A stretch of DNA of 64,000 nt, from the IMG/VR virus record IMGVR_UViG_3300042350_004528, positions 234,834-298,833 of that record; one strand, 5' to 3'. Positions 3,218 to 63,981 of the stretch are shown here, piece after piece. The notes under the pieces are model-generated. The model worked only from the letters and a program-made list of their open reading frames with translations, was not told where the DNA came from and made no database searches. The position numbers and the translations under genes were made by a program. Position 1 is the first letter of the stretch, and each line of letters opens with the position of its first letter.

Positions 3218-3232
3218 ATTATTTTCTATTAG

Positions 3233-3306: not shown

Positions 3307-3336
3307 TAATTTTATACAAAGATAGTAATTAATTTT

Positions 3337-3840
3337 TTATTTTCCAAATCCAGTATCGGTAAAAAATCTGAGCGTCTCGGCCATAAATGTATTTGTATCA
3401 AAATTTGGGTCGAATGTTAAATTATCATCCACAATAATATTATCATCCTCATCAACTTTATATTGGTACATTTCAAAACTGTTTGGGGTAGTTTTTATAG
3501 GATCAACTTTAATAATATCACCCTCAAATTGAACCCCACATAGTTCACAAAAATGTACAACTTTATAACTATTCGTATCAGGCATTGGGATTAGAATGTC
3601 TTTATGTGTTAAACTCATCGCCTTTGAACCATCTTCATTTGTGTGATTGCAACTCAATTTTATCTCATAAATTTGTTTTTCATACGAAGTTATGTGATTA
3701 TTTTTCGATTCGATTAAAATATCAACTTTTTTCTTGAGCTCTCGTTCAATGGAGTTTAGATCTCGAGTAACCTTTTCTTTATTAATCTCAAGTTCGATTA
3801 TTTTTTTACGGCCCTCTATAAACGGATTCTTTGATTCCAT
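3337..3840 (-). CDS. Hypothetical protein (coiled coil + CxH...CxxC)
   Basis: 167-aa ORF. Confidence 0.6.
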   Translation of the reverse strand: MESKNPFIEGRKKIIELEINKEKVTRDLNSIERELKKKVDILIESKNNHITSYEKQIYEIKLSCNHTNEDGSKAMSLTHKDILIPMPDTNSYKVVHFCELCGVQFEGDIIKVDPIKTTPNSFEMYQYKVDEDDNIIVDDNLTFDPNFDTNTFMAETLRFFTDTGFGK

Positions 3841-5957: not shown

Positions 5958-6002
5958 GATTAAATCTTTTACATAAATAGTTTGATTTTATAATAAATCC
6001 CC

Positions 6003-12970: not shown

Positions 12971-13268
12971 ATGTCAACCATGGTTTTTTTTGTTGGGTGT
13001 TTAGTGCCTCAACTATCTTATTATAATTTTCTTCATAAAATCTTTCACCGTCTTCCGAATTTGCCCAAAATAGAAATCCTGGTTCAGTCTGCGTCCTCCC
13101 CAGGATTTCTTTTGTTGCTCTTCTATCTTTTTTAAGAAATGAAATACTAACATAGTTCAGTATAAACTTCCCATCAGTCTTTGACCAATACGCCAGTTGG
13201 CCAAATTTTTGTTTGTTCTTTACTCTGGCATTTTCAATAATCTCTATTAAAAATTTAACATTTCCCAT
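12930..13268 (-). CDS. Hypothetical protein
   Basis: 112-aa ORF. Confidence 0.5.
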   Translation of the reverse strand: MGNVKFLIEIIENARVKNKQKFGQLAYWSKTDGKFILNYVSISFLKKDRRATKEILGRTQTEPGFLFWANSEDGERFYEENYNKIVEALNTQQKKPWLTYEYEIKKPEQKEE

Positions 13269-14650
13269 TAACTAGATTCTTCCATATCAACCACACCCGA
13301 GTCTTTAACTATACCCTCAAGAACCTTAAACTCAAAAGATTTGTGTTTGTAAATTCTAGGTACCAGACCAGATTCTAATCTGACACATACACCCTCACGG
13401 ATATGGGTATCATCGAGCATTGATTTACCTTTAGAATAAATATCAACAAGTTCAGTAATCTTGTCATTAAAATCCCTATCACCGTTTATACTTGGATAGG
13501 TTAATTCCATTTCAATTCTTCTGAAACGTGTTATCTCTGGAACATGTTTTACACCTATCTCATTACATCTTTTAACAACATCATCCCAAGTGTAATCAAC
13601 TGATTGGCCATCTGGGTTGGTCATTGTCATACGGTACACATAAAAGTCTTGTTGGGCTGTCGAACAACCATATGAGTAAACCATGTGCTTTTTATCGCCC
13701 ATGTTGGAATACTGTTTCGTGAATTCCTTATCACCCATTTTACTTGTATCAACAGATGGCATGATTGGCGTATTCTCATTCTCATAACCAACAATCTCAA
13801 GATAAACAGTCTCACCTTTTCTTAGATTACCTTTGAAAAGAGCGAAAGCTTTATCTCTTATGGTTGGATCATGGAATTGGGTTGCATTTGATTTAGCCTC
13901 CTCCAAAACAACTCTGCGTGTACCAGTTAAATAAGCCCATTCAGTCTCGTTTATCTTGATACCAAGCTTAATCAATAATCTTTCAAACCAATTTAAATCA
14001 CGGTCAACCAACACATGCCCAACTCTATGAGAAGTTCCGTGTAGTTTTTCTGTGATGACAACCAAATCCTCACGATTTATTTGATGTACATTCTTACCAA
14101 AATGTTCGGTATCAATATGTTCCTTGAACATAACCGAAGTTTTTGCCACTCTGGTTTTTTTACCTTGGTTTTGTTGAGCGGCTTTTATTGTGTTCGGGTT
14201 GATGTACTTATTACAAATTGGTACACCACCCCATTCATCAATCTCAAGACCCTCATCAACCAGACCAGTCACATAAATGAAACCAAAACTGTGTAATGGT
14301 GTCCAGAAACCATCTGAGATTTCCCCACGAAATCTCTGGGCCCTAACCCTACGGTTATCATCAAACATACCAGCTTTATCATCTGGGAATTTGTTCTTTG
14401 TTTTATCTCGATATAAGTTATTCGCATGGCAAAACTCATGAGATAACTGACCATCACATGGGAAGTATACCCCCCAATGATCTTCTTTGCAATCTAAACC
14501 AACCACCACTTGATTACCGTGGCATGTCGCTAATTGCACCTTATCCGCATTAGGATGCGGTCTAACGTTTTTAAGTTTTGTTACTATTCCTTTATACATA
14601 TTTTTTACTTTGATTCTACCATTACGTAAGTACCCTCTACCATACCCCAT
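13268..14650 (-). CDS. ATP-dependent RNA ligase with N-terminal OB/tRNA-binding-like domain (DRB0094/Rnl5-like)
   Basis: N-terminal HPNADKVQ...FPCDGQL, motif I TEKLHGTS, REGVCVR, YKHKSFEF. Confidence 0.8.
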   Translation of the reverse strand: MGYGRGYLRNGRIKVKNMYKGIVTKLKNVRPHPNADKVQLATCHGNQVVVGLDCKEDHWGVYFPCDGQLSHEFCHANNLYRDKTKNKFPDDKAGMFDDNRRVRAQRFRGEISDGFWTPLHSFGFIYVTGLVDEGLEIDEWGGVPICNKYINPNTIKAAQQNQGKKTRVAKTSVMFKEHIDTEHFGKNVHQINREDLVVITEKLHGTSHRVGHVLVDRDLNWFERLLIKLGIKINETEWAYLTGTRRVVLEEAKSNATQFHDPTIRDKAFALFKGNLRKGETVYLEIVGYENENTPIMPSVDTSKMGDKEFTKQYSNMGDKKHMVYSYGCSTAQQDFYVYRMTMTNPDGQSVDYTWDDVVKRCNEIGVKHVPEITRFRRIEMELTYPSINGDRDFNDKITELVDIYSKGKSMLDDTHIREGVCVRLESGLVPRIYKHKSFEFKVLEGIVKDSGVVDMEESS

Positions 14651-19310: not shown

Positions 19311-19826
19311 TTATGAAAAAGTTAAAATTATATCCTTAACGGTATCATCGTTTGTGTGTGTCCTGGCCGTTAATAACTTATACTTCTCAAAAAATGGGTC
19401 GTACTCTGATGAAAAATATTGATATTTATTCAACTCGTCTATATTTTTCGCAAAATATTCATTGACCATAATTCTTTCACTTGATGTGGTCTGCATAAGC
19501 ATTATGTAAACCAAGAAACCATCATCAGTTGTTAAAAAAACAACGTTATTTTTAAAATTGATTGATATGAAATTTAAAAAATCGTCATTAATCATACCCG
19601 AATATTTGAATGGGCATAATTTATACAGAACACCCATCTGGCCAATCAATATCGGTTGTATTTCTTGATTAAAAGAATTGGTGATAAATATATTATCACC
19701 ATTTTCTTCAAGGATTTTTGCAAAAAAAATATCCTTGAACACATTCTTATTTAAGTCAATATAATACTTTATGATTTTGTTAAAAGCCTCATCAAAAAAT
19801 TTTGGATCTTTCATTTTAACCATCAA
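19311..19826 (-). CDS. Hypothetical protein
   Basis: 171-aa ORF. Confidence 0.5.
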   Translation of the reverse strand: MMVKMKDPKFFDEAFNKIIKYYIDLNKNVFKDIFFAKILEENGDNIFITNSFNQEIQPILIGQMGVLYKLCPFKYSGMINDDFLNFISINFKNNVVFLTTDDGFLVYIMLMQTTSSERIMVNEYFAKNIDELNKYQYFSSEYDPFFEKYKLLTARTHTNDDTVKDIILTFS

Positions 19827-20917
19827 CTTATCGCATATATTCTTTTTCTAAAACGAATTAACAAGTCGTCAACAAATTTTCTATCAACAGAATTAGGTAG
19901 ATCTGATTTTGCGTAAAGGTCATCCAAAAGTGTGATTTTTGATTCCGCTTCGGCAAGAAGATCCTCATATTCAGCATCACCATTTCTTATTTTAAGTAAT
20001 TCCTCAGCATCTGGTCTTTTGACGATCACTTGTTTAAGTTCGGCAATCTCGGTTGCCATACGTATCAACCTAATACAGTGCATCATATTTTTTGAATCAT
20101 AACCCTTACCATGTTCTTGGTTTGTGTTATATCGATCGTCATTACGCTTTTCAACCCAATCCCAGTATTCCTTATAATCTTTACAGTAAGAAGTATAACC
20201 ATCCTTGTTATAGATAATTGTCGCAACTGGCTTTTCGCCAAATGGAATGGAACTTAATCTAACCTCATTCGATGTGTCATCATCATTGACGATGCCACGA
20301 TAACCGAGCCTAGAATTTTCTTTACTGGCGTAATGATCATAAAACATGGCGTATACATCTCTGGCATGTGGTACATTAACCAAACCACATTTGTTCTGTA
20401 CATAACCACTATTGTCCAAAAATGCTTTGAGTGGGATCGATTTATAACCATCGACAACATAGCAAAAATCCAATATAGATTTGCGCTCTTTGTCAACTGG
20501 GTTTACAATTTTTTTGTTTAACCCGCGAGCTTTTTTAATTTGTGCGACAGCGTACCCACCAAATGAATCGCGGCAAACTTTACTGATGAACTTATCCTTA
20601 TGTTGTAGAATCATATCAAACATTGGGTGTTTGTAAAGTATATTCTCTTCGGGCATATTGAATAACTCAATTATGTTTGGGTTTTGCGATTGTAATAATT
20701 GCAAGAACCTACCAATCTCATAGTAGACAGCATCATTTGTGGCATCCGAAACTTGTTCAATATAGTCATATCCCAGTACGTTATCAAGCGGTAAGTAGTA
20801 AACTCCACGATAATCGGTATCGGATGTTGGTTTGTGTGTACCATACGCCCTTGATCCAGATATTGTTTCAAACAATAAAAGTCCATTCGTTCTTAAATAA
20901 TCTATCGTTAATCGCAT
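19823..20917 (-). CDS. Pol-beta superfamily nucleotidyltransferase (RlaP/YcgL-like)
   Basis: SGSRAYG...SDTDYRGVY, NPNIIE, YDSKNMMHCIRL. Confidence 0.85.
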   Translation of the reverse strand: MRLTIDYLRTNGLLLFETISGSRAYGTHKPTSDTDYRGVYYLPLDNVLGYDYIEQVSDATNDAVYYEIGRFLQLLQSQNPNIIELFNMPEENILYKHPMFDMILQHKDKFISKVCRDSFGGYAVAQIKKARGLNKKIVNPVDKERKSILDFCYVVDGYKSIPLKAFLDNSGYVQNKCGLVNVPHARDVYAMFYDHYASKENSRLGYRGIVNDDDTSNEVRLSSIPFGEKPVATIIYNKDGYTSYCKDYKEYWDWVEKRNDDRYNTNQEHGKGYDSKNMMHCIRLIRMATEIAELKQVIVKRPDAEELLKIRNGDAEYEDLLAEAESKITLLDDLYAKSDLPNSVDRKFVDDLLIRFRKRIYAIS

Positions 20918-23978: not shown

Positions 23979-26063
23979 ATGGCACAAAAAGTATCATATA
24001 CAGGGGTTTTCTTGGACAAGGATTCAAGAGCCGTATTAGAAAAAGAGTTCAAATCGCAGGTTCCTGATGGATGGGAGTGGATTGCGCATCATATGACCAT
24101 AACTTTAGGGGAAATGGTTGATAAATCGGAATTGGGTAAACAAGTTGCCCTTAATATAGTTTCATTTGGTAAAGATGATAAAGTCATGGCAATTGGTGTC
24201 AAGGGTTACCCTAGTAAAAATGAAAAACCGCACATTACTTTAGCCGTTAATCGCGCTGAGGGTGGTAAACCTTATATGAGTAATTTAATTAAGGAATGGG
24301 TACCATACTCGATCGGTGCCATATTAACTGGTGTTGTCAGTGAATACCCGCCACAATCTAAAGAAACACTTAATGAAGCTTATGATATTAAATCATTACC
24401 GTTCTATAACGATGTTATCAATAAAAACGGTAAAATATATCAGGTTGGTGGGGCTGTTAGAGATTTGTATCTGGGTAAACAATCTAAAGACCTTGACATC
24501 GTTATTAGTGGAATACCAGCTAAGGAACTCGAAGATGTGTTGAAAAAATATGGTAAAGTTGATATGGTTGGTGCGTCATTTGGTGTTATTAAGTTCACAC
24601 CACCAGATGGTGAAGAAATTGATATTGCAATACCAAGAACTGAAAAGAAGAGTGGTGTTGGTTATCAGGGTTTTGATGTGTCGGCTGATCACACTCTCCC
24701 TATCGAAAAGGATCTTGAGAGAAGAGATTTCACAATAAATTCAATCGCTAAAGATAGTGATGGGAATGTTATTGATCCATTCGGTGGGTTAAAGGATCTT
24801 GATTCGAAGGTTATCAAATTAACAAACCCTAAGGCTTTTTCAGATGACCCATTAAGGATGTTAAGGGCGATTCAATTTGCGTCTAGGTTTGGTTTTAAAA
24901 TAGATGAGGAAACGTTTGATGCTATTAAAAAGAATGCGATGACTATTGACGAAATATCAAAAGAGAGAATATTGATAGAGTTTGATAAAATCGTAAACAA
25001 AGGTAATCCCAGAGTCGGAGCTGAGTTATTAGTTTCAAGTGGATTGTACAGGGGCATATTCGGTACCGAGTTTGATGGTGATTTTGAACCGTTTGACCAA
25101 GTAACTAGGAACAGTGAGTTCGCTTACTGGTTGATCCAATCGTTCACCGAACAACCAGACCAATACTATAAGAATATAATGAAAGGTGACATCGATACGG
25201 CTAGAGAGATATCAGCTTTGGCTTATATGTATAACAACTTACCTGGTAACGACAAAGCAAAACAAAGATTTGTTTATTTTAATATAAATAAGATATCACC
25301 ACAGATGTTTAATAGTAATTTCGTGAGAAGTATATTGAGTGATGTTATCAATGACTTTGATTCTCAAAAATACCCAGCTGGTTATTCGGATTTAAAAGTC
25401 AATGGTAATGATTTAATGGCAATGGGTTTAAAAGGTAAAGCTGTTGGTGATATGTTAAATAAATTAATCTCTGCAATATATTCTGATAAAATTGAAAATA
25501 CAAAGAATGGTTTGTTGGGTTTTGTTGAGAGGAATAAGGATATGTTAAATGAATCTGTTGGTGGTACAAATAAGAATAGAGTTGTGTTTTATGATTTTGA
25601 TGGTACTTTAATGGATAGTCCACTTCCTGACACAGGTAAACAAATCTATAAAGAAAAAACTGGTAATGTATACCCACATCAAGGTTGGTGGGGTCGTGCT
25701 GAGAGTTTGGATTTAAATGTCTTCGACATAAAAACAAATCCAGATGTTGAGGCTAAATTTAGAGCTGACTCATCGGATCCAAATACGCATGTTGTTTTAT
25801 TAACCAATAGGTTGTCAAAACTTGAGGAACCAATTAAAAAAGTTCTTGACAAACATAATATGGTATTCGATTTTTATTCTTTTAAAAATGATGGTCGTGA
25901 AAAGGGTGAACGTGTTTTGGATATTTTAGCCAAAGTATATCCGAATACGAATGAAATTGAATTTTATGATGACGATGAGCGACACATTCAAAATGTAAGA
26001 GATAATTTAATCGACACCGATTACGATTTCAAGGTGAATCAAGTTATTGATGGTAGATTATAA
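23979..26063 (+). CDS. Three-domain RNA end-repair protein: 2H phosphoesterase + CCA-adding/poly(A)-pol-type nucleotidyltransferase + HAD phosphatase
   Basis: HHMT and PHIT (2H); VGGAVRD...DLDIV, RRDFTINS, DDPLRMLRA (class II NTase); FYDFDGTL...LLTNR...FYDD (HAD). Confidence 0.85.
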   Translation: MAQKVSYTGVFLDKDSRAVLEKEFKSQVPDGWEWIAHHMTITLGEMVDKSELGKQVALNIVSFGKDDKVMAIGVKGYPSKNEKPHITLAVNRAEGGKPYMSNLIKEWVPYSIGAILTGVVSEYPPQSKETLNEAYDIKSLPFYNDVINKNGKIYQVGGAVRDLYLGKQSKDLDIVISGIPAKELEDVLKKYGKVDMVGASFGVIKFTPPDGEEIDIAIPRTEKKSGVGYQGFDVSADHTLPIEKDLERRDFTINSIAKDSDGNVIDPFGGLKDLDSKVIKLTNPKAFSDDPLRMLRAIQFASRFGFKIDEETFDAIKKNAMTIDEISKERILIEFDKIVNKGNPRVGAELLVSSGLYRGIFGTEFDGDFEPFDQVTRNSEFAYWLIQSFTEQPDQYYKNIMKGDIDTAREISALAYMYNNLPGNDKAKQRFVYFNINKISPQMFNSNFVRSILSDVINDFDSQKYPAGYSDLKVNGNDLMAMGLKGKAVGDMLNKLISAIYSDKIENTKNGLLGFVERNKDMLNESVGGTNKNRVVFYDFDGTLMDSPLPDTGKQIYKEKTGNVYPHQGWWGRAESLDLNVFDIKTNPDVEAKFRADSSDPNTHVVLLTNRLSKLEEPIKKVLDKHNMVFDFYSFKNDGREKGERVLDILAKVYPNTNEIEFYDDDERHIQNVRDNLIDTDYDFKVNQVIDGRL

Positions 26064-29139: not shown

Positions 29140-29982
29140 CTACCTGTTGGTGGGGATTAAGTTATTTAAATATTCTCTATTTTGAGTAAAGATTGGTGTT
29201 TCGACATCCAATTCCCAAGCGCTTCTGGTGTAAACATCCTTTGGATCAATCACAACCGTATCACGATTGACTTCCGCATTGGCACTTTTACGAACAAACG
29301 TCTTTTCAATTTTTCTGATTATACCACCACGTTTTTCTCTTGGTGAGTAATCATTCCAATTTGTACCAGCCTGAAATATCAATTCTTGCATACCATCGGT
29401 CTTAACCCCATGTAATTGTTTTGGTGAGTATAAACTCTGAGCGACCGATGAAATTGAATTTCTGGTCGCATCTTGTTGTCTCCAGATGAAATAATTCTCA
29501 ACCTCAACTTTTTGTGGGATTTGAAATACCCTGGCATCAAACATAGCCAATTTAGGTTCGCTGGCGTATCTTTTATCCGTCACAGACTTTCTCTCGATAA
29601 CATGTAGATTCTTAATATAACGATCCATTCTCAATTTATTAAAGATGGCTGTTGCCATTGAGGCTGAAACGCTCGCCATTTTCTGTAAGTTATTATCGAA
29701 CCAAGCTTGTGTGCCCTCATCTTCAAAATCGGTGATCAAAATTGAAATCTCATCTGATTGCACATACGCAAACTTAGCACCCATAATGTTTTTACATAGA
29801 TATGCCGCTGTCTCATCCATATCATCAATCAAATCCAAATCAAATGGCCTTCTCAAACCTTTTGTATAGGTGTGAAAAGCCTTACCATCAATTCTGATAA
29901 TGGTGTAACCTCTTCTTGGTAATGAAATACGAGTTCTATCCTCATAGTTCGATTTCATTCTGTCTCCTAATGCGTCTTTCAT
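29140..29982 (-). CDS. thg1: Thg1-like tRNA(His) guanylyltransferase / 3'-5' polymerase
   Basis: RIDGKAFHTYT, YVQSDEIS, FDARVF, WRQQDATRNSIS. Confidence 0.92.
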   Translation of the reverse strand: MKDALGDRMKSNYEDRTRISLPRRGYTIIRIDGKAFHTYTKGLRRPFDLDLIDDMDETAAYLCKNIMGAKFAYVQSDEISILITDFEDEGTQAWFDNNLQKMASVSASMATAIFNKLRMDRYIKNLHVIERKSVTDKRYASEPKLAMFDARVFQIPQKVEVENYFIWRQQDATRNSISSVAQSLYSPKQLHGVKTDGMQELIFQAGTNWNDYSPREKRGGIIRKIEKTFVRKSANAEVNRDTVVIDPKDVYTRSAWELDVETPIFTQNREYLNNLIPTNR

Positions 29983-38701: not shown

Positions 38702-38776
38702 GCGACAATAGTAATAAAAAATGTGGATAAAACAAATAAAAAAAGGGTAAAATATTTTACCCTTTTTAAATTTCTG

Positions 38777-39152
38777 TGGAGTCGGAGGGATTCGAACCCT
38801 CGTCTCGTTTAGCCATTCAATAATTCTCATTCACATGCTTAGTTCATTTTTCTAAACAAACAAAATATTTGTCTTCACTAACCCAGAAGTTCAATAAAAC
38901 TGGAATACCTTTTTTGGAGTTCCCACCTCCCACCTGGCATCTAAGGGTTTTTGCAGTTTTAACTGACAGTTGTTGGCTTACGCCAATTCGTAGTCTGCAA
39001 ACTCAACTGGCTGACCGTTCAACACGATGTTGCCTTCAGCGTCAATGTAGCTTTCGCCATCTGAAATTGTGTATAGGTTATTTAAGTGTTTCCGATACTA
39101 ACACCACATGCAAATTAAAGAACGAATCTACCGATCGATTCCAGTCGACCCC
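38777..39152 (-). ncRNA. ssrA: tmRNA; tag ORF 39058-38978 = GESYIDAEGNIVLNGQPVEFADYELA*
   Basis: 5' GGGGTCGACTGGAATCGA; 3' T-arm GAGGGTTCGAATCCCTC + CGACTCCA with G3:U70. Confidence 0.92.
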
Positions 39153-40401: not shown

Positions 40402-40442
40402 GTCTATATAAATATGTTCGTTTTTAAAAAAGTGCAACTATC

Positions 40443-40524
40443 GGACTAACCTTTACAAACTTTCCGAAGAAAGCTTTTGGGGTTGAACCAAATTTAACCA
40501 GAGTTAGTTGCTGAATTTAGTCCC
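40443..40524 (-). ncRNA. Stem + TTCAGCAA motif small RNA candidate
   Basis: GGACTAA/TTAGTCC closing stem, TTCAGCAA after the 5' arm, starts just after a TAnnTTTG promoter. Confidence 0.55.
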
Positions 40525-40580
40525 AATTGCGATACAAAGATAAGAAATGTTTTTTTAATAAACAAGTATTTTTGAAAATT

Positions 40581-45027: not shown

Positions 45028-45036
45028 GTAAATTTC

Positions 45037-45098
45037 GGGTTGATCTTTTTAGTCGGATTTACAAGTCTGATTTTTTAAGATTTGCTGAACTCAACCCC
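45037..45098 (-). ncRNA. Stem + TTCAGCAA motif small RNA candidate
   Basis: GGGTTGA/TCAACCC closing stem, TTCAGCAAA, internal CAGACTTGTAAATCC resembling the Tyr anticodon arm with one extra nt. Confidence 0.55.
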
Positions 45099-45116
45099 AA
45101 TAAGTAAATAAAACAC

Positions 45117-45235
45117 AGGATGCGTTTATACGTGCTCTAACCAACTGAGCTATCGACCTCATACGAAGCCGAGTGGGACTCGAACCCACGACCCCGAGGT
45201 TGACATCCTAAAGTTTAATTTGCGGAATGCATCCT
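45117..45235 (-). ncRNA. Circularly permuted tRNA-like RNA (YrlA/Y-RNA-like)
   Basis: AGGATGC/GCATCCT terminal stem + TTCCGCAAA; T-arm precedes D-arm; acceptor stem closed by a GTAT loop. Confidence 0.75.
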
Positions 45236-45249
45236 CTTTGTTTTATTTG

Positions 45250-45327: not shown

Positions 45328-45449
45328 AGCCCAGAGCTGGATTCGAACCAGCGCCTTTTTTTTCCATAAAAAATTGTTAGATAGTGATTTGCTGAAATCA
45401 TCCACACTGGATGACTCTTTTTTTAATGCTACCGCTACACCATCTGGGC
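45328..45449 (-). ncRNA. tRNA-like RNA with anticodon arm replaced by a hairpin + TTCAGCAA module
   Basis: GCCCAGA/TCTGGGC acceptor, D-loop-like segment, TCATCCA-GTG-TGGATGA hairpin + TTTCAGCAAA, GCTGG-TTCGAAT-CCAGC. Confidence 0.7.
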
Positions 45450-45527: not shown

Positions 45528-45710
45528 ATATTTGATGGTGTCACAACTATATACCATCAGCTACGGAACCCTTCTGTTAATAAGTAAGTAGGAGATTTAA
45601 AAATCTCGTCCGTATCAAATCCACGCCATTGGTTACGTTGTCTCACGACAAGAGGCTTTACCAAGGCAAAGTTTTAATTTTTTCACCAATATGTCAAAGA
45701 ACAATCTTTG

Positions 45711-45783
45711 AGCCACATGACGGGATCGAACCGCCGACCTACTGATTACAAATCAGTTGCTCTACCAGCTGAGCTAATGTGGC
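45711..45783 (-). tRNA. tRNA-Thr(TGT)
   Basis: ACTGA-TTTGTAA-TCAGT. Confidence 0.92.
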
Positions 45784-45788
45784 ATCTG

Positions 45789-45861
45789 TGGTGCGGGGAG
45801 GAATCGAACCTCCGACACAGGGATTTTCAGTCCCTTGCTCTACCAACTGAGCTACCGCACC
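45789..45861 (-). tRNA. tRNA-Phe(GAA)
   Basis: AGGGA-CTGAAAA-TCCCT. Confidence 0.92.
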
Positions 45862-46001
45862 AAGTAAAGATAATGGTTGGATTCCCGTTACACCCAACTC
45901 TGTACTGCTTCTTGAGTTTTACAAGCGCTTGGCAGAGGGAGCTGATTTCTTCGGCCCAAACTCGCTTGTCGACAGCTTATTTGGAGAAACCCATTATCTT
46001 C

Positions 46002-46100
46002 GTAGCGTATGTGGGATTCGAACCTAAACCAACTATTCATGCTTCGTTGGCCACCTGTACACGGGCTCATGACTGCGCCGTGCTCTCCAAGAGTACGCTA
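46002..46100 (-). ncRNA. tRNA-like RNA (acceptor + T-loop, non-canonical core)
   Basis: TAGCGTA/TACGCTA acceptor, GG-TTCGAAT-CC T-loop, internal TCATG/CATGA stem; no 7-nt anticodon loop found. Confidence 0.5.
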
Positions 46101-46334
46101 TGTATTTTAAAAGTTACAATTCATCGGAATGTGTTTGTTTTCCATTAAAAGTAGAGTTTGTATTATTTGCCGAATACATTCCCGAATTGTGGTACAAAAG
46201 TAAGAACAAAATTTTTAACCTGCAAATACTTTTGAAACTTTTTTCATTTTTTTTCAAAGAACTTATTTTAACGCTTGCTCTCGCAATTGTGGTACAAATG
46301 TAAGAACGAAACTTCAAACTCGCAAACTTTCAAC

Positions 46335-54314: not shown

Positions 54315-54524
54315 ATGAGAATAATAATCAAAGAATTACCAAAGATAAATCACATATATCTATTTGATCAAACAATGCGCCCACTCTTTATGGACATTGT
54401 AAGTAAAAGGAATACAAAATCTTATATAAAAAAAATGATAAAAAAGTACGATATTATTGATTTTGATTTTGTTTCTGCGATAGATTTATCAAATACTACC
54501 GATAGTTTTAGGGGCCATATTTGA
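54315..54524 (+). CDS. Hypothetical protein
   Basis: 69-aa ORF diverging from 54238. Confidence 0.4.
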   Translation: MRIIIKELPKINHIYLFDQTMRPLFMDIVSKRNTKSYIKKMIKKYDIIDFDFVSAIDLSNTTDSFRGHI

Positions 54525-56181
54525 TAATAGAAACAGTACCATTGCTGTTATTTTCCATAATTTGCTTGGTTTCTTGGCTGATTTTTGTGTCATCAATACA
54601 GATTGCGACAATATGAGGTAATTTACTCAATCCAACTGGTATTTTATCCAACTTAAGGTTCATATGAACATCCACGAGAAACAAATCATTACAGTTTGTT
54701 ATATCCTCTTTTATTTCCCTTAAATCGCAACTCGATGCGGTTAATCTAACTAGTTTTTTAAGTTTACCGATGTTAGCGGGTAGTTGTTTGAGTTTTTGGT
54801 TATTATCCAAAACCAACTCAGTCAATTTTTCACATTCACCAAGATCGCCAATTTCTCTGATATCACATCCAGCACAATCAAGATACTCCAAAGATTTTAA
54901 CTCGGAGAACCACTCAGGTACTGAGGTAATTTTCTTGTTGTTTCTAAATTTAATCTTTTTTAGGTTTTTCAAGTCTTTAATCGACTCTGGTAAAAAAGTT
55001 ATACCACAGTCACTTAAATCAAGACTTTTTATACTAGTAATCTCACCTATTTTTTCAAGATATTCCGATTCAATTTTATGACCAGAAAAATCAACGGTTT
55101 CTGGTTTAGATTCCTTGAATATTTTGATGATCTCATCTCCAAAGCCAAGATTCAATAAATATTTAATATCATCAACCTGTTTGTTGTTTTTCTTTTGGCG
55201 ATACGCTAAGACACGCTTAATGATGTAGTTTCTAAAATACAATTTAATATCTTTATTGTTGAAAAGAAATTCATTGATGTTTATACTTTTATCGTTCGCA
55301 TCCATATATTGATTATCCTCAAAATGGAATTGTAGGCGATATTCGGGGTGTTTTGATATGGCTTTTTTGGAACCATACCCTTTCTTAATTAAAACGAATA
55401 ATTCACCTCGGCTATGATAACTATCAAACATATTACCATAACGAGTACCAGCAGTGCACCAGGTTGTGTATTTACCAAACTCAATATTTGCTTGGCGATC
55501 ATGGGTGATTACTATAACCCATTCACTATTTTCAAAAACAAGTTCAGCTTTACCCTCGACTTTCTTATTATCGACAAAATTTTGGATACAGGTTATTTCT
55601 TTATGGTCTAAAGTATGAATCGAATCATCGCCAGTATCGGTACTCATATATGGTTTAACCATATTAACAAATTCATTGATGTCTTTAAATCGATTAATAT
55701 CGCGATTCTCAACAGAAAGTACATTTGTTTTCTTTAAGAATGAAAATACCTCTAGTGCTTCAATAACTTTAGATTGCAAATCCTCAAAAAAGTTTTGGTA
55801 TTCTGGTCTTATCTCAGCGACCGAATTTTCTTTGCTTGCTAGATAAGCATCATCAATTCTATCTCTAATGATATTTTTATACAAGTTAATAAACCAACTA
55901 ACGTATTCTTTATTATGGCTTGGGTCACACTCAACAAAAAAGTTAAATAATAACTCCATTGGGGTTTTACCTTCCAAATATGTACCGTTTCTTTGATATT
56001 GGTTGCGATAAAACTCCATAAATAAATTATCACCGTCATACATTTTAACAGAGTCAACAACAAACTCTTTATCTGGGACTACATGTTTACCATAGATATT
56101 TTTATCAACGGCCTTTTTATGATATTTCTTAAAGATATCAAAAACGTACTCTAATCGTGTTTTCTTGTCCTGTTCAGTCAT
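54508..56181 (-). CDS. Protein with central TTWCTA-type phage domain and C-terminal leucine-rich repeats
   Basis: LDLSDCGITFLPESIKDLKNL, LDCAGCDI, LVLDNNQKLKQLPANIGKLKKL repeats. Confidence 0.8.
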   Translation of the reverse strand: MTEQDKKTRLEYVFDIFKKYHKKAVDKNIYGKHVVPDKEFVVDSVKMYDGDNLFMEFYRNQYQRNGTYLEGKTPMELLFNFFVECDPSHNKEYVSWFINLYKNIIRDRIDDAYLASKENSVAEIRPEYQNFFEDLQSKVIEALEVFSFLKKTNVLSVENRDINRFKDINEFVNMVKPYMSTDTGDDSIHTLDHKEITCIQNFVDNKKVEGKAELVFENSEWVIVITHDRQANIEFGKYTTWCTAGTRYGNMFDSYHSRGELFVLIKKGYGSKKAISKHPEYRLQFHFEDNQYMDANDKSININEFLFNNKDIKLYFRNYIIKRVLAYRQKKNNKQVDDIKYLLNLGFGDEIIKIFKESKPETVDFSGHKIESEYLEKIGEITSIKSLDLSDCGITFLPESIKDLKNLKKIKFRNNKKITSVPEWFSELKSLEYLDCAGCDIREIGDLGECEKLTELVLDNNQKLKQLPANIGKLKKLVRLTASSCDLREIKEDITNCNDLFLVDVHMNLKLDKIPVGLSKLPHIVAICIDDTKISQETKQIMENNSNGTVSIIKYGP

Positions 56182-59244: not shown

Positions 59245-59910
59245 TTATTTTTTCTTTCTTTCAAGAATCGAGTCAATCATACCATATTCTTTAGCTTCTG
59301 GTGATCTCATCCAATAATCCCTCTCAGAATCTTTATATACTTTGTCATAATCCTGGCCAGTATGTTTAGATATGATCTCATAAAGTTCGGTTTTTAACTT
59401 ACCAATTTCCTTTGCTGTGATTTCAATATCAGTGGCTTGACCCTCAGCGCCCCCCAAAGGTTGGTGGATCATTATTCTTGAGTGGGGTAAGGCATATCTT
59501 TTACCCTTTGCCCCAGCACAAAGTAACACAGCGGCCATAGATGCGGCTAAACCCGTACATATTGTTGATATTTCTGGTTTAATATACTGCATTGTATCGT
59601 AAATACCCAAACCAGCATAAACAGAACCACCAGGTGAGTTTACATAGATCTGAATTGGGGCTTCTTTGTCAATTGATTCCAGGTATAATAACTGAGCTTC
59701 TATAATATTGGAAACTCGATCATCAATCGCCGTACCCAAAAATATAACTCTTTCCATCATTAATCTGGAAAACACGTCAATTTGAGCGACATTTAATTCG
59801 CGTTCTTCCATAATGTATGGAGTAACCGAACTCCTGTAATCACTTAATGTGATACTTGAAATACCCATATGCTTCGTTGCATAGTTTTTAAAATCGTTAC
59901 CAATATTCAT
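59245..59910 (-). CDS. clpP: ATP-dependent Clp protease proteolytic subunit
   Basis: DVFSRLM, YVNSPGGSV, GLAASMA, MIHQPLGG, ERDYWM. Confidence 0.96.
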   Translation of the reverse strand: MNIGNDFKNYATKHMGISSITLSDYRSSVTPYIMEERELNVAQIDVFSRLMMERVIFLGTAIDDRVSNIIEAQLLYLESIDKEAPIQIYVNSPGGSVYAGLGIYDTMQYIKPEISTICTGLAASMAAVLLCAGAKGKRYALPHSRIMIHQPLGGAEGQATDIEITAKEIGKLKTELYEIISKHTGQDYDKVYKDSERDYWMRSPEAKEYGMIDSILERKKK

Positions 59911-61686: not shown

Positions 61687-62070
61687 TTATTTAATCTCGA
61701 CAGTCACACTTTTTGTTTCTTCTTTTTTTCTCAATGGTACTTTGATTTTAAGTAACCCATTTTCCATTTTAGCTTCAGTTTTACTCAGATCGTGTGAGCT
61801 TGATAAGTAGTAACTGTATGAATTATCAACATAGCGCTTAACAAAACCTTCAGCGTTTTTAATATTAGTTTTAACAATTAATGTCCTACCAGAAACCTCA
61901 ATTGATAAATGTTCTTTATCCAATCCTGGTAAAGGTAATTCCGTTAAAAACTCCTTGTCGCTTGGAATGTCATAAGATGTTCTAAAATCCTCATTGAAGA
62001 TGTTAAATAATTCATCAAAGCTTTGCCATAAATTCTTTTGGCTTCTCATGTTTGTTCTTAGTGTGTTCAT
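61687..62070 (-). CDS. Small heat-shock protein (Hsp20)
   Basis: LPGLDKEHLSIEV, AKMENGLLKIKVP. Confidence 0.85.
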   Translation of the reverse strand: MNTLRTNMRSQKNLWQSFDELFNIFNEDFRTSYDIPSDKEFLTELPLPGLDKEHLSIEVSGRTLIVKTNIKNAEGFVKRYVDNSYSYYLSSSHDLSKTEAKMENGLLKIKVPLRKKEETKSVTVEIK

Positions 62071-62446: not shown

Positions 62447-63847
62447 TTAAGCTGTAATAGGCTCGTAACGTGCACTATGTACAGTTTTATTCATGATGCT
62501 GATTGGTGACATATCCTCACCAGTCAACAATGATTTTAAAATTGCTGGAGAAAACCCACTCACCAATGCAGTACCGTTGTCGGTAGTCTGAACTGGGTAG
62601 TTTCCACCATTTCTGCTTTGAATGTTCCAGAATACCAATTTTGGCATTGTGTAACCAGCGGACTCGTATTGTTCACGAATCATATCCAAAGCGCTGTTTT
62701 TATAACGAGTTGCTGAATTGAACTCCATATCTGACATAATCAGAATAGTTGTTGGCATCTCAGACTCTGGTAAGCTGAATTTTTTAGCTTGATTCAAGAT
62801 CAAATTAAAAACCGCTTCCAAATTTGTACTCATACCCCAGTCAGCTCTCGCCAATTGCATGTGGCGATCACTTAAGTTACCGTTAAGGTATTGCAATTGT
62901 GGGTTTTCACTAAAAGTTATGAAAGCGTCTTTAAACTTACCTTCATTTCTTTCTGAAATGTAAAGACCCAAAGAGATACAAACATCCATACATGTAACGT
63001 TAGCGTTACCACCAGCTGGTGAACTCATTGATCCAGATACATCGCATACTGGTAAAACTCGCTCATTGTTACCTTCCATGTAATTAGGGAGTGAAGCCCA
63101 TTGCTTCATAGCCATGGTTTTGTCCCCTCTAACTAATGTTTTCAACACATCATATGGATATACCGCAGATGCGTTTACCTTAGTATCGCCAGTTTTGTAG
63201 GCTGTAAAACGTTCAGCATCGTGTTTACCAAATGCTTTAGTATAACGAGCCATAGCAACAGATGGTACGTGTTCATATGTAACAACACCCCATTGATTTG
63301 AGCACATAAGTTGTTCAACCACCTTGGTTTTTTCAACCAACATCTTACGATATTGTTTAGGTGATAGCTTCATATAACGCTCCAATGCGATTGCTTCTTT
63401 ACCTTTACGAGGCATCCATTTAGCGCAAAGACCATTATTTTCGTTAAGAGCATTAACGATAAGGTTTTTTGCCTGGGTATCCAATGAGGTGCCAAATAAC
63501 ACTAAAAGATCGTCCCAACGTCCATATTCTGGAACGTATGATAGGTTTTTAGCCAAAGCCTCGTTATGGTTTTCAACCAAATAAAGCATTAAATCCTTGA
63601 AAATTTGACGCTCACCCGCACCACCACGAACGTCACGAGCCCAGAACATAGTTCTAAGAGCGGTTAATGGACTTTCGTTGAAAGCTTTTGAAAAGTTAGC
63701 GATTAATCTTCCCTTATCTTGACCACGCATCGCACCGATGGTGAAAAATAAATCAACACAAGCGTTCAATGATGAACTGTTAGTAACCATTCCGTTTTCG
63801 GTTACATTGTCTCTTGTTCTAAGAGCATTTACTAATGAGTTTGCCAT
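62447..63847 (-). CDS. DUF2828-type TROVE/Ro60-like protein with C-terminal vWA domain
   Basis: FWARDVRGGAGER, YGRWDDLL, AKWMPR; MIDAS DVSGS, SDMEFN, VFWNI, VSGFSP. Confidence 0.8.
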   Translation of the reverse strand: MANSLVNALRTRDNVTENGMVTNSSSLNACVDLFFTIGAMRGQDKGRLIANFSKAFNESPLTALRTMFWARDVRGGAGERQIFKDLMLYLVENHNEALAKNLSYVPEYGRWDDLLVLFGTSLDTQAKNLIVNALNENNGLCAKWMPRKGKEAIALERYMKLSPKQYRKMLVEKTKVVEQLMCSNQWGVVTYEHVPSVAMARYTKAFGKHDAERFTAYKTGDTKVNASAVYPYDVLKTLVRGDKTMAMKQWASLPNYMEGNNERVLPVCDVSGSMSSPAGGNANVTCMDVCISLGLYISERNEGKFKDAFITFSENPQLQYLNGNLSDRHMQLARADWGMSTNLEAVFNLILNQAKKFSLPESEMPTTILIMSDMEFNSATRYKNSALDMIREQYESAGYTMPKLVFWNIQSRNGGNYPVQTTDNGTALVSGFSPAILKSLLTGEDMSPISIMNKTVHSARYEPITA

Positions 63848-63981
63848 ACAATAGGTTTTAATTAGGGTACAAAAGTAATAAAGATTTTTTAAATAGTCAA
63901 GTTTTTGGGCGTTTTTTTTTCAATTTTTTTTCAAACGCTACTTTAACCTCCTCATTTATAGAGTATAAGAGTCCACCATCT

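What the first reader, a model, noticed from the sequence alone, without database searches (positions are those of the whole stretch)
45328..45449. The opposite permutation: normal tRNA ends with the anticodon arm replaced by a hairpin-TTCAGCAA module
Order is 5' acceptor, D segment, A-rich linker, TCATCCA-GTG-TGGATGA hairpin + TTTCAGCAAA, linker, T-arm, 3' acceptor + U73. Topologically this is the same object as 45117-45235 opened at a different point, only ~90 nt away. It could be a substrate for the phage CCA enzyme or be aminoacylated.
Basis: partly seen in the sequence, partly recalled or inferred. Interest (0 to 1): 0.75.

Follow-up and report, generated by a model that had tools for sequence, protein, structure and literature searches.

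The report
tRNA-ended phage Y-like RNA
A 122-nt gene in a freshwater jumbo phage's tRNA cluster is not a tRNA: it is a circularly permuted member of a widespread, apparently undescribed phage RNA family that travels with a Ro60-like protein, rearranged so that it has real tRNA ends.

Summary
On the minus strand, 45449->45328 encodes a perfect 7-bp acceptor stem plus U73, a D arm and a T arm. The anticodon arm is replaced by about 70 nt holding a 7-bp hairpin, the motif UUCAGCAAAUC and a U6/A6 hairpin.

The hairpin-plus-motif is the signature of a large family of phage RNAs found in tRNA arrays (consensus A-GGAUnnn-UUCAGCAAAU...AAAAA-nnnAUCC-UGUU). Their cargo is either an anticodon-like hairpin or a permuted tRNA-like domain resembling YrlA.

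The family co-occurs with DUF2828/DUF7788 proteins: 27 of 39 records versus 1 of 37 controls. These proteins fold like Ro60. The window encodes one at 62447-63847.

Read as a circle and reopened in its hairpin loop, the element aligns end to end with one tRNA-like subtype (60-69% identity, z about 9). Its termini fall exactly where that subtype has an acceptor-hairpin loop.

The element is 98% conserved between two phage lineages whose neighbouring spacer is 72% identical. This layout was found only in that clade.

Not shown: expression, CCA addition and protein binding. Aminoacylation has no support. The most likely role is a Y-RNA-like partner of the Ro-like protein that is processed like a tRNA.

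The parts
45328..45449 (-). Element B (the finding): 122-nt tRNA-ended RNA, a circularly permuted member of the Ro-like-protein-associated RNA family
   Evidence: Sequence; fold; permuted alignment to family subtype 2; 98% identical in L007; the family model matches its interior only
45443..45449 (-). B acceptor 5' strand GCCCAGA; pairs with 45329-45335
   Evidence: 7/7 Watson-Crick pairs; the outer 4 pairs have probability 1.0
45426..45440 (-). B D arm GUGU-AGCGGUA-GCAU, preceded by U8 G9
   Evidence: Carries A14, G18 G19 and A21 like a tRNA. Aligns with the subtype-2 D arm GGUGUAAUGGUAGCAC. Thermodynamic pair probability is low, 0.09
45398..45414 (-). Module hairpin UCAUCCA-GUG-UGGAUGA: the family's closing stem, capped by a triloop
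   Evidence: Pair probability about 1.0. GGAUGA/UCAUCC is the family's GGAUnnn/nnnAUCC stem
45386..45396 (-). Family signature UUCAGCAAAUC
   Evidence: Exact twice in the window; near-invariant in 60 aligned family members
45358..45373 (-). Inner hairpin U6-AUGG-A6
   Evidence: Aligned by the family model to the family's inner hairpin. The same U-run/A-run hairpin occurs in L006:1868-1926. Weak thermodynamically, about 0.2
45336..45352 (-). B T arm GCUGG-UUCGAAU-CCAGC
   Evidence: Pair probability 1.0; canonical GGUUCGAAUCC
45328..45335 (-). B acceptor 3' strand UCUGGGC plus discriminator U73; no encoded CCA (next bases CUAAAC)
45114..45237 (-). Element A: permuted tRNA-like family member (closing stem, UUCCGCAAAUU, T arm, closed acceptor hairpin, D arm)
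   Evidence: Rfam YrlA 45.9 bits, below the threshold of 69; family model R1 29.6 bits with a 69-nt insert; compensatory changes versus L007; present in RNA contigs
45034..45099 (-). Element M: mini family member with anticodon-like loop CUUGUAA
   Evidence: R1 52.7 bits here (this copy was in the training set); its L007 homologue, not in training, scores 55.1 bits
46123..46184 (-). Further mini family member (signature UUCGGCAAAU, loop CUUUUAA)
   Evidence: R1 42.3 bits, E 8e-9; homologue L007:1771-1833 scores 46.6 bits
40425..40530 (-). Divergent family-like RNA (GGGACUAA stem, UUCAGCAAC, T-arm-like hairpin) with its own promoter-like motif and a U-run
   Evidence: it did not appear among the R1 matches up to E 1, so membership is tentative
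62447..63847 (-). Ro60-like protein (Pfam DUF2828 + DUF7788; HEAT-repeat ring plus vWA with DxSGS MIDAS motif), the proposed protein partner
   Evidence: Pfam; MIDAS motif; AF2 model pLDDT 92.6; top 12 PDB and top 5 Swiss-Prot fold matches are Ro60/TROVE
23979..26063 (+). CCA-adding enzyme fused to 2H-phosphoesterase-like and HAD (Swiss-army-knife RNA repair) domains; candidate enzyme for B's 3' end
   Evidence: Pfam
29140..29982 (-). Thg1-like 3'-5' nucleotidyltransferase (context: repair of tRNA 5' ends)
   Evidence: Pfam PF04446
13268..14650 (-). RNA ligase (context: RNA repair toolkit)
   Evidence: PF09414

Best explanation
Element B is a non-coding, tRNA-shaped RNA that belongs to a widespread family of phage RNAs. 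The family lives in tRNA arrays and partners with a Ro60-like (DUF2828/DUF7788) protein, much as Y RNAs partner with Ro60.

Family members have a 7-bp closing stem (GGAUnnn/nnnAUCC), the single-stranded motif UUCAGCAAAU next to the 5' strand, an A-rich tract before the 3' strand, and a variable cargo. One recurrent cargo is a permuted tRNA-like domain: T arm, acceptor hairpin closed by a loop, then D arm.

B is that RNA with the circle cut elsewhere. The closing stem is capped by a GUG triloop and the acceptor hairpin is open. The likeliest origin is tandem duplication of a subtype-2 gene followed by loss of the outer halves.

Consequences (inferred, not shown):
- With a genuine acceptor/T-arm minihelix and tRNA-like spacing in the array, B is cut out by RNase P and 3' processing like its tRNA neighbours.
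- It can then receive CCA from the host enzyme or the phage's CCA/repair enzyme.
- It still presents the stem-plus-motif module to the Ro-like protein.
- It would therefore link that protein to enzymes acting on tRNA acceptor ends, inside the phage's RNA-repair and tRNA-maintenance toolkit.

Shown: the anatomy, family membership, the permutation, conservation, the protein's Ro60-like fold, and the genomic linkage of RNA family and protein family.

Inferred: binding, processing, CCA addition and the biological role.
For: Anatomy and position in the array.

Family:
- About 85 members with the consensus were recovered from viral contigs.
- Sixty minis were aligned.
- The inner hairpin, which was not used for selection, is 83.7% paired, and all 5 of its pairs covary. 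The covariation score for the whole structure (closing stem plus inner hairpin) is 0.615 versus 0.141 shuffled.
- A covariance model built on the minis finds members that were not in training: L007 (55.1 and 46.6 bits), window 46123-46184 (42.3 bits), element A (29.6 bits), and three RNAs in Listeria phage List-36 (24-35 bits).

Permutation:
- Rotated B aligns colinearly with subtype 2 at 60-69% identity over about 107 nt.
- Scores are 96-112 versus 15-25 unrotated; shuffles give 30-35, sd 8.
- The best of all 122 rotations starts in the hairpin loop.
- The subtype's UUGG acceptor loop coincides with B's termini.
- The family model matches B only at positions 10-54, that is everything except the closing stem.

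Subtype 1 and subtype 2 pairs are adjacent in L181, L213, L232 and L236. The window has A (subtype 1) and B (subtype 2, permuted).

Conservation between window and L007: B 98%, the tRNAs 74-99%, A 78%, spacer 72%. All three differences lie in linkers or shift the A-run.

Protein:
- PF11443 is found in 27 of 39 family-bearing records, most of them fragments and 2 of 2 complete ones, versus 1 of 37 control records.
- In at least 10 records a mini lies 60-130 nt upstream of the gene on the same strand.
- The model has pLDDT 92.6. The top PDB and Swiss-Prot fold matches are all full-length Ro60/TROVE.

Context in the window: CCA/2H/HAD enzyme, Thg1-like enzyme, RNA ligase, RlaP and tmRNA.

Precedent: phage phiLo Ro60 binds two phage Y-like RNAs (PMC12135203), and YrlA RNAs are tRNA mimics (PMC4201824).
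Against: - No RNA evidence for B. Four metatranscriptomes that hold exact stand-alone contigs of A+M show zero depth on B. The best RNA runs hold only 30-40% of B's sampled words. The flanking phage tRNAs are equally absent, so small tRNA-like RNAs may simply be lost from these libraries.
- The B layout was found only in one narrow clade: 5 near-identical metagenome contigs and 1 viral contig. There is therefore almost no covariation for B itself.
- Binding of the Ro-like protein to any family RNA is untested. If binding needs the free 5'/3' ends of the closing stem, B's capped hairpin might not bind.
- The D arm and the U6/A6 hairpin are weak in thermodynamic folding. An 8-bp alternative pairing (AGAUGGUG with CACUAUCU) appears in the minimum-free-energy fold.
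Confidence: 0.6

Rival explanations
1. B is an intron-containing tRNA. A 38-nt insert is removed to give tRNA-Val(AAC), with an A5/U5 anticodon stem and loop CUAACAA.
For: The loop has the C-U-NNN-A-A pattern of anticodon loops.
Against: - The 'intron' is the family signature, which is shared by about 85 RNAs that are not inside tRNAs.
- It sits at position 31/32, not 37/38, and would leave a 16-nt unstructured variable region.
- From general knowledge: known bacterial and phage tRNA introns are group I introns of 200 nt or more, and A34 tRNA-Val is not a bacterial type.
- The phage already has tRNA-Val(UAC).
- The would-be anticodon differs in the sister clade (AAC versus AAA) while the rest is 98% conserved.
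- The anticodon stem would be all A-U.
Confidence: 0.03
2. B is a non-functional by-product of rearrangement in a tandem array of family genes and tRNAs: a relic that is not made, or not used.
For: It is confined to one clade. It is not seen in RNA contigs where A+M is seen. Tandem family genes make such rearrangements easy.
Against: - 98% identity across lineages whose spacer is 72% identical and whose element A is 78% identical.
- Every helix is intact, including a perfect 7-bp acceptor stem.
- Spacing to both neighbours is exact and tRNA-like.
- It appears to stand in for the subtype-2 RNA that related arrays carry.
Confidence: 0.12
3. B works independently of the Ro-like protein. It would be a bait or competitor for enzymes or host toxins that act on tRNA acceptor ends or T arms (CCA-end nucleases, nucleotidyltransferase toxins, RNase P, modification enzymes). 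The hairpin-plus-motif would then only be an inherited scaffold.
For: Opening the acceptor end is the one thing that distinguishes B from its relatives. The phage invests in end-repair enzymes: the CCA/2H/HAD fusion and the Thg1-like enzyme. The minis carry anticodon-like loops of Lys, Asn, Arg and Thr types, which suggests a decoy theme in the family.
Against: The signature and hairpin are kept letter for letter. 19 nt are identical to a mini in an unrelated contig, L006. B is 98% conserved throughout, which argues that the module is still used. No specific host toxin is implicated.
Confidence: 0.15
4. B is a chargeable RNA: a tmRNA-like or otherwise aminoacylated tRNA-like molecule.
For: It has the same gross layout as a tmRNA tRNA-like domain, with acceptor and T arm and the anticodon arm replaced. 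It has a free 3' end with a discriminator base. Ala is the only isotype missing from the phage's 27 tRNAs.
Against: - C3:G70 rather than G3:U70, so there is no alanine identity.
- No tag reading frame or pseudoknots, and ARAGORN tmRNA mode finds nothing.
- A proper tmRNA exists at 38774-39152.
- There is no anticodon arm for synthetases that need one.
Confidence: 0.05
5. The hairpins serve as intrinsic terminators for plus-strand (antisense) transcription.
For: The consensus scan flags 45336-45352 and 45398-45414 on the plus strand as hairpins followed by T-runs.
Against: The T-runs are the complements of A-runs, which are a family-wide feature of the minus-strand RNA. One of the 'terminators' is simply the T arm. 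No plus-strand gene lies upstream. 5 hits were found against 2.1 expected, a weak excess.
Confidence: 0.02

Closest known systems
YrlA / bacterial Y RNAs with Ro60 (Rsr) (Rfam RF02553; Chen et al. 2014, PMC4201824), and phage phiLo Ro60 with Yrl1/Yrl2 (PMC12135203)
   Same: A modular small RNA with a conserved protein-binding stem plus a tRNA-like domain (T arm, acceptor-like stem, D arm). Partnered with a ring-shaped Ro60-fold protein carrying a vWA domain. Found in phages as well as bacteria. The neighbour A gives a sub-threshold YrlA hit (45.9 bits).
   Different: - The protein is DUF2828/DUF7788, not Pfam TROVE: PF05731 finds nothing in the genome.
- The stem-plus-motif signature is unlike the YrlA stem.
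- B has the tRNA's native order and open acceptor ends. YrlA has its ends in the anticodon-side stem and a closed acceptor.
- B gives no YrlA hit.
Dictyostelium Class I RNAs (Rfam RF01414; Kjellin et al. 2021, PMC7919456)
   Same: Same layout as the family's minis: a 5' G-started short stem joining the ends, a conserved motif right after the 5' strand with a shared CAGCAA core (UACAGCAA in Felix-O1-like phages; the paper describes an 11-nt motif in this position), a variable middle, an A-rich tract, a 3' strand followed by CUG(U), and about 55-60 nt in length. The Rfam model gives full-length hits of 20-37 bits in 25 of 40 family-bearing phage records, versus 0 of 37 control records and 0 of 14 genomes.
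   Different: All hits are below the threshold of 41.5 bits. Class I RNAs are reported as unique to dictyostelids, and the protein known to bind them directly is an RRM protein. B itself carries the module as a capped hairpin inside a tRNA frame. Homology versus convergence is not resolved.
tmRNA tRNA-like domain
   Same: Normal tRNA ends (acceptor stem plus T arm), with the anticodon arm replaced by other RNA.
   Different: B has no G3:U70, no tag frame and no pseudoknots, and is 122 nt long. The phage has a separate tmRNA.
Phage T4 stable RNAs C and D (species 1 and 2) in the T4 tRNA cluster
   Same: Small stable non-tRNA RNAs encoded within a phage tRNA cluster. rnaC ends with a T arm and an acceptor-like 3' part. 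As far as I know their function is still unknown.
   Different: No UUCAGCAAAU signature, and no match to the family model.
Circularly permuted tRNA genes (the red alga Cyanidioschyzon merolae; from my own knowledge)
   Same: The same RNA fold encoded with different break points.
   Different: There the permuted gene is matured into a normal tRNA through a circular intermediate. Here both layouts seem to be end products, and neither is a decoding tRNA.

Membership tests
tRNA (RF00005) | 7-bp acceptor stem with discriminator base | tested here: met
   GCCCAGA/UCUGGGC plus U73
tRNA (RF00005) | T arm with GGUUCGAAUCC-type loop, and a D arm carrying A14, G18 G19, A21 | tested here: met
   The D-arm pairing is weak in thermodynamic folding
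tRNA (RF00005) | Anticodon arm (5-bp stem, 7-nt loop) between the D arm and the variable region | tested here: not met
   About 70 nt stand there instead. An arm appears only if 38 nt are notionally removed
tRNA (RF00005) | Score at or above the Rfam gathering threshold (29 bits), or a default ARAGORN call | tested here: not met
   20.3 bits for a partial alignment; not called by ARAGORN
YrlA (RF02553) | Order: stem 5' strand, T arm, closed acceptor-like hairpin, D arm, stem 3' strand | tested here: not met
   B has the tRNA order with open acceptor ends. It matches this order only after rotation
YrlA (RF02553) | Covariance-model score at or above 69 bits | tested here: not met
   No hit on B at E up to 10. 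Neighbour A scores 45.9 bits
YrlA (RF02553) | Encoded with a TROVE-domain Ro60 orthologue | tested here: inconclusive
   PF05731 is absent from the genome, but a Ro60-fold DUF2828/DUF7788 protein is present 17 kb away
Phage DUF2828-associated RNA family (defined here) | Signature UUC(A/C)GCAAAU immediately 3' of a GGAUnnn strand | tested here: met
   UGGAUGA-UU-UCAGCAAAUC, of which 19 nt are identical to the mini in L006
Phage DUF2828-associated RNA family (defined here) | 7-bp closing stem formed by the RNA's 5' and 3' ends, with a 3' UG(U)U tail | tested here: not met
   The stem is present, but as a hairpin capped by GUG. The RNA ends lie in the acceptor stem. The family model aligns only positions 10-54, at 15.1 bits and E 0.28
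Phage DUF2828-associated RNA family (defined here) | Colinear homology to members over the full length (allowing rotation) | tested here: met
   60-69% identity over about 107 nt to subtype 2; z about 9 against shuffles
Phage DUF2828-associated RNA family (defined here) | DUF2828/DUF7788 gene in the same genome | tested here: met
   62447-63847. Family-wide association is 27/39 versus 1/37
Phage DUF2828-associated RNA family (defined here) | Physical binding to the Ro-like protein | not testable with these tools
   Needs EMSA or co-purification. The complex predictor gives no verdict for RNA
Dictyostelium Class I RNA (RF01414) | 42-65 nt, ends joined by a short stem, an 11-nt motif with a CAGCAA core, a 3' CUGU, and a score of at least 41.5 bits | tested here: not met
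   B is 122 nt with a capped stem. There is no RF01414 hit in the window's genome at E up to 0.01. The family's minis reach 20-37 bits
tmRNA (RF00023) | G3:U70, a tag reading frame, pseudoknots | tested here: not met
   C3:G70; ARAGORN tmRNA mode finds nothing; the true tmRNA is at 38774-39152

The most novel reading that the evidence does not exclude
The RNAs found here may be the long-missing partners of a second, very large branch of Ro60-like proteins (DUF2828/DUF7788). That branch has thousands of 50%-identity clusters, occurs in 710 cultured phages including Felix-O1-like coliphages and P100-like Listeria phages, and also occurs in eukaryotes.

They may also be homologous to the Class I RNAs of Dictyostelium, so far thought unique to social amoebae. 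That would define a new Ro/Y-type ribonucleoprotein shared by phages and eukaryotes.

Within it, element B would be a natural experiment. The same RNA is re-cut so that it has tRNA ends and can be CCA-tailed, and it would tie the particle directly to tRNA-end surveillance or repair.
Probability: 0.25. Interest if true: 0.9.

Novelty: new variant of a known kind. Interest (0 to 1): 0.74.

Why it matters
Y RNAs and Ro60 are a classic but still poorly understood RNA quality-control system. This locus matters for four reasons.

- **A second Ro60-like branch has its own RNAs.** A divergent and far more numerous Ro60-like protein family in phages has its own conserved RNA partners. They sit inside tRNA arrays and were not found in Rfam 15 or in the literature I could search.

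- **The cargo points to tRNA surveillance.** These RNAs carry tRNA parts as cargo: anticodon-like hairpins and whole permuted tRNA-like domains. That points to a role in tRNA surveillance, repair or decoying during the phage-host conflict over tRNAs.

- **Element B isolates one variable.** It is the one known case in which evolution re-opened such an RNA at the acceptor end. It therefore tests whether a free, CCA-capable tRNA end changes what the particle does.

- **The family is experimentally accessible.** It occurs in cultured model phages such as Escherichia phage finno (Felix-O1-like) and Listeria phage List-36 (P100-like), so binding, processing and knock-out experiments are straightforward.

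The resemblance to Dictyostelium Class I RNAs, if it reflects common descent, would give those RNAs a biochemical context.

Tried and rejected
- **BLAST of the region against GenBank phages** found only tRNA matches and no close relative. BLAST of a mini against the same collection found nothing.
- **Pattern UUCAGCAAAUC...CUUGUAA in viral contigs** returned mostly chance hits in coding regions. Only 3 were real. The better pattern was AGGATNNNTTCMGCAAATY combined with a closing-stem filter.
- **Search for other tRNA-ended (B-type) members:**
  - The viral scan found only L007 plus chance hits.
  - The metagenome scan found 5 near-identical contigs plus 1 chance hit.
  - Variants with a different signature or hairpin would have been missed.
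- **Relatives reached through the DUF2828 protein** could not be extended to the tRNA array, because their records are not held for whole-record searches.
- **Pfam TROVE and RtcB** are absent from the genome, and T4-type Rnl1 was not found, although that search rang nowhere, so it shows nothing. Sequence search of the protein against PDB gave nothing. The profile search gave only weak Ro60 vWA hits. The fold search was decisive.
- **T4 rnaC/rnaD** were checked as possible relatives. They have no signature and no model hit.
- **B's tRNA scaffold** does not derive from any of the phage's 27 tRNAs.
- **RNA-seq** was available only as assembled contigs and only one lay-down call was allowed. B was not seen.
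- **The closing-stem pairing statistic** (100% paired) is circular, because pairing was a selection criterion. Only the inner hairpin, the flanks and the model hits outside the training set count as independent evidence.
- **AFDB cluster search** could not tell whether Dictyostelium has a DUF2828 protein, because organism names were masked.
- **The highly transcribed 491-nt region of Listeria phage CKA15** (PMC12282133) may be the ROOL RNA rather than family RNAs. The corresponding region of List-36 hits ROOL. I therefore do not count that paper as expression evidence for the family.
- **The 8-bp alternative pairing in B's minimum-free-energy fold** is about what chance gives in 122 nt (my estimate: about 3 expected).
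- **No complex prediction** was run, because jobs that include RNA receive no verdict.
Full report
**Setting**

The window is the last 64 kb of a 298,833-bp viral record judged complete. [quoted passage not shown] Every isotype except Ala is present.

The same window holds an RNA-repair and tRNA-maintenance set:
- a CCA-adding enzyme fused to 2H-phosphoesterase-like and HAD domains (23979-26063)
- a Thg1-like enzyme (29140-29982)
- an RNA ligase (13268-14650)
- an RlaP nucleotidyltransferase (19823-20917)
- a DUF2828+DUF7788 protein (62447-63847)

Promoter-like TAnnTTTG motifs upstream of two genes suggest a Bacteroidota host. That host assignment is my inference from the known promoter consensus.

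**The observation**

- a perfect 7-bp acceptor stem with U73
- U8 G9 and a D arm with A14, G18 G19 and A21
- a canonical T arm
- between them, about 70 nt containing a 7-bp hairpin capped by GUG, the motif UUCAGCAAAUC, a spacer and a U6-AUGG-A6 hairpin

It lies 4 nt after tRNA-Asn and 6 nt before tRNA-Asp. CCA is not encoded.

Standard detectors do not call it. Rfam tRNA gives only a partial hit of 20.3 bits. The cloverleaf-like fold costs -29.2 kcal/mol, or -34.2 with helix extensions, against a minimum free energy of -35.7. The module hairpin and T arm are essentially certain in the ensemble.

**What the hairpin-plus-motif is**

The 11-mer occurs exactly twice in the window. The second copy follows the neighbouring YrlA-like RNA.

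Pattern scans of viral contigs, filtered for a closing stem, recovered about 85 RNAs with one architecture:
- a conserved 5' flank (UUUA), then a GGAUnnn strand
- UUC(A/C)GCAAAU
- a variable middle
- an A-run, then the nnnAUCC strand, then UGUU

Nearly all sit among tRNA genes.

The middle, or cargo, takes several forms:
- **Minis:** most often a 5-bp hairpin with a 7-nt loop of anticodon type, C-U-NNN-A-A, with NNN such as UUU, GUU, UCU or UGU.
- **Permuted tRNA-like:** a T arm, an acceptor-like hairpin closed by a loop, then a D arm, as in YrlA.
- **One contig (two overlapping loci):** D arm, anticodon arm and T arm inside the closing stem (L150/L151).
- **Larger cargoes** of 150-167 nt also exist.

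In an alignment of 60 minis, the inner hairpin, which played no part in selection, is 83.7% paired with compensatory changes at all five pairs. The closing-stem statistic is circular, because pairing was required for selection.

A covariance model built from the minis then found members that it was not trained on:
- the L007 homologues (55.1 and 46.6 bits)
- a further mini in the window at 46123-46184 (42.3 bits)
- element A (29.6 bits, with a 69-nt insert)
- three RNAs in Listeria phage List-36 (24-35 bits)

Rfam 15 has no family for these RNAs. I found no description of them in the searchable literature.

**The protein partner**

PF11443 (DUF2828) is encoded in 27 of 39 family-bearing viral records. 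Most of these are fragments under 50% complete, and both complete ones have it. Only 1 of 37 control viral records has it.

In at least ten records a mini lies 60-130 nt directly upstream of the gene on the same strand (coordinates). Y RNA genes lie next to rsr in the same way.

Cultured phages show the same linkage:
- In Escherichia phage finno (Felix-O1-like), the gene abuts the tRNA array. The array gaps hold RNAs with the variant signature GACCnnn-UACAGCAA...GGUCUGG, including a permuted tRNA-like one.
- In Listeria phage List-36, three family RNAs fill the 400 nt upstream of the gene.

The window's protein has a DxSGS MIDAS motif. It models with pLDDT 92.6.
- The twelve best PDB fold matches are all full-length Ro60/TROVE structures: phage phiLo Ro60, Xenopus and human Ro60, and Deinococcus Rsr. 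After them there is a sharp drop to generic vWA domains.
- The best Swiss-Prot models are Ro60 from five species, followed by telomerase p80.

The protein family is large. There are 6,694 clusters at 50% identity, and 710 cultured phage genomes encode it, where it is sometimes annotated 'Ro-like RNA binding protein'.

**Element B is a circular permutation**

B was treated as a circle and cut in its hairpin loop. It then aligns colinearly, end to end, with one tRNA-like subtype (L213:3185, L181:5800, L236:7908, L211:2261, L232:1807) at 60-69% identity over about 107 nt. The aligned order is signature, inner hairpin, T arm, acceptor, D arm (GGUGUAGCGGUAGCAU against GGUGUAAUGGUAGCAC), A-rich tract, closing strand.

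Alignment scores are 96-112, against 15-25 for the native order. Shuffles give 30-35 with sd 8. Of all 122 rotations, the best starts in the hairpin loop.

The subtype's acceptor hairpin loop (UUGG) falls exactly at B's 3' and 5' termini. The family model sees B only across model positions 10-54, which is everything but the closing stem.

In other phages this subtype sits beside a second subtype whose D arm is of the common UAGCUCA...GAGC kind. The window has that second subtype as element A and has B in place of the first.

The simplest origin is a tandem duplication of a subtype-2 gene with loss of the outer halves. That is inference.

**Conservation and spread**

Compared with the related contig L007, B is 98% identical: three differences, all in linkers or shifting the A-run. 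The surrounding tRNAs are 74-99% identical, element A 78% and the spacer 72%. In A, the acceptor-like hairpin and the T stem differ between the two lineages by compensatory changes.

The B layout was found only in this clade. Selection on B is therefore inferred from its low divergence, not from covariation. A recent exchange of this segment between the lineages cannot be excluded.

**Expression**

Four metatranscriptomes from three studies contain exact, stand-alone contigs of 151-201 nt covering A plus most of M (45052-45232). The flanks are empty, which argues against DNA carry-over and for a stable A+M RNA.

B has no depth in these runs. Neither do the phage's tRNA-Asp and tRNA-Asn on either side of it. 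Other RNA runs hold at most 30-40% of B's sampled words, while DNA runs hold all of them.

I read this as 'not shown'. Short, quickly processed tRNA-like RNAs may simply be lost from such libraries. If so, B behaves like the tRNAs rather than like A+M.

**Mechanism**

*Shown:*
- B keeps the family's stem-plus-motif module intact.
- B has a complete acceptor/T-arm minihelix and a D arm.
- The phage encodes a Ro60-fold protein whose family is genomically tied to this RNA family.

*Inferred:*
- The module binds that protein.
- RNase P and 3' processing release B from the array, as they release tRNAs.
- CCA is added.
- The particle thereby gains a tRNA-like handle with a free acceptor end, which the closed relatives lack. 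That handle would connect it to acceptor-end enzymes in the phage's repair set.

**Rivals considered**
- **Intron-containing tRNA.** ARAGORN calls Val-AAC with a 38-nt intron when introns are allowed. I reject this on the position of the insert, the lack of a known removal mechanism, the non-bacterial anticodon type, the change of the 'anticodon' in the sister clade, and the family nature of the 'intron'.
- **Functionless rearrangement relic.**
- **Protein-independent acceptor-end decoy.**
- **Chargeable or tmRNA-like RNA.** There is no G3:U70, and a true tmRNA is present.
- **Plus-strand terminators**.

**Comparison with known systems**

B works most like a Y RNA of the YrlA kind. It is not a member of RF02553, of tRNA or of tmRNA: the defining features were tested and not met.

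The minis of the family resemble Dictyostelium Class I RNAs in every described feature. They give full-length sub-threshold hits to RF01414 in 25 of 40 family-bearing records, against 0 of 37 control records and 0 of 14 genomes (PMC7919456). Whether this reflects homology is open.

A 2025 study of a P100-like Listeria phage speculated that abundant unannotated RNAs upstream of its Rsr-like gene are Y RNAs (PMC12282133). At least one of those regions may instead be a ROOL RNA.

**Verdict**

The functional claims are open.

I classify B as a new variant of a known kind, a Y-RNA-like tRNA mimic. It lies inside an RNA family that itself appears to be undescribed.

Noticed in passing
window 46123-46184 (-): A further mini member of the family, just upstream of the tRNA array. 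Signature UUCGGCAAAU; inner loop CUUUUAA, which is Lys-anticodon-like. Family model 42.3 bits, E 8e-9; the homologue at L007:1771-1833 scores 46.6 bits. It overlaps a probably spurious plus-strand ORF (45708-46148).
   Followed up: partly
window 40425-40530 (-): A divergent family-like RNA: a GGGACUAA/UUAGUCC stem, UUCAGCAAC, a T-arm-like hairpin and a UUCG hairpin. It has its own TAnnTTTG-type promoter motif and a terminal U-run, so it may be an independent transcription unit.
   Followed up: partly
window 45052-45232 (-): Elements A and M appear together as exact stand-alone contigs of 151-201 nt in four metatranscriptomes from three studies, with empty flanks. This is the best sign that these RNAs are expressed and stable in nature.
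   Followed up: partly
window 13268-14650, 19823-20917, 23979-26063, 29140-29982: A full RNA-end repair set: RNA ligase, RlaP nucleotidyltransferase, a CCA-adding enzyme fused to 2H-like and HAD domains, and a Thg1-like enzyme next to tRNA-His.
   Followed up: partly
window 63848-63900 and 40531-40560 (-): Promoter-like TAnnTTTG motifs (TTACTTTTGTACC, TTATCTTTGTATC) of the Bacteroidota type. Similar motifs recur across the genome. A relative carries an SprB-domain gene. The host is probably a freshwater Bacteroidota.
   Followed up: no
whole genome (G000): All 27 tRNAs lie in this window. Every isotype is covered except Ala, and there is a tRNA-Ile(UAU) and a tmRNA at 38774-39152.
   Followed up: no
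L273 (Escherichia phage finno, MN850619) 5701-6560: A Felix-O1-like coliphage. The DUF2828 'vWFA protein' gene abuts the tRNA array. The array gaps hold family RNAs with the signature GACCnnn-UACAGCAA...GGUCUGG, three minis and one permuted tRNA-like RNA. None is annotated.
   Followed up: partly
L274 (Listeria phage List-36, NC_024364) 1920-2471 and 3112-3381: A ROOL RNA match (91.5 bits, threshold 99.1) lies between tRNA genes. Three family RNAs lie directly upstream of the Ro-like 'RNA-binding protein' gene, and a 'tRNA splicing ligase' gene lies downstream.
   Followed up: partly
L150:6431-6527(-) and L151: A third layout of the family: D arm, anticodon arm (loop CAUCAAA) and T arm in tRNA order inside the family closing stem, so that the closing stem stands where the acceptor stem would be.
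   Followed up: no
many loci, e.g. L137, L152, L174, L193, L196, L198, L228: The minis' inner loops copy the anticodon loops of particular tRNAs (UUU Lys, GUU Asn, UCU Arg, UGU Thr, GCA Cys, UGA Ser). Several of these are classic targets of anticodon nucleases, so the minis may be decoys or sensors. This is my inference.
   Followed up: no
L163:3852-4002, L228, L178:11588-11754(-), L215:5081-5247: Family members with large cargoes of 150-167 nt and unknown structure (shared CUGGAGCC...GAAGGUU motifs) between the signature and the closing strand.
   Followed up: no
window 45528-45709 (-): The 180-nt spacer between tRNA-Thr and tRNA-Asn holds a hairpin (GAGAUUUUUAAAUCUC) and a UACUUACUUAUU motif. 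That motif recurs after element A (UUUACUUAUU), and both are conserved in L007. Function unknown.
   Followed up: no
window 59245-59910, 61687-62070, 54508-56181: Downstream of the Ro-like gene lie an HSP20 gene, a ClpP protease and a leucine-rich-repeat protein. The order is conserved in relatives, which also carry a ribosomal protein S21 gene.
   Followed up: no
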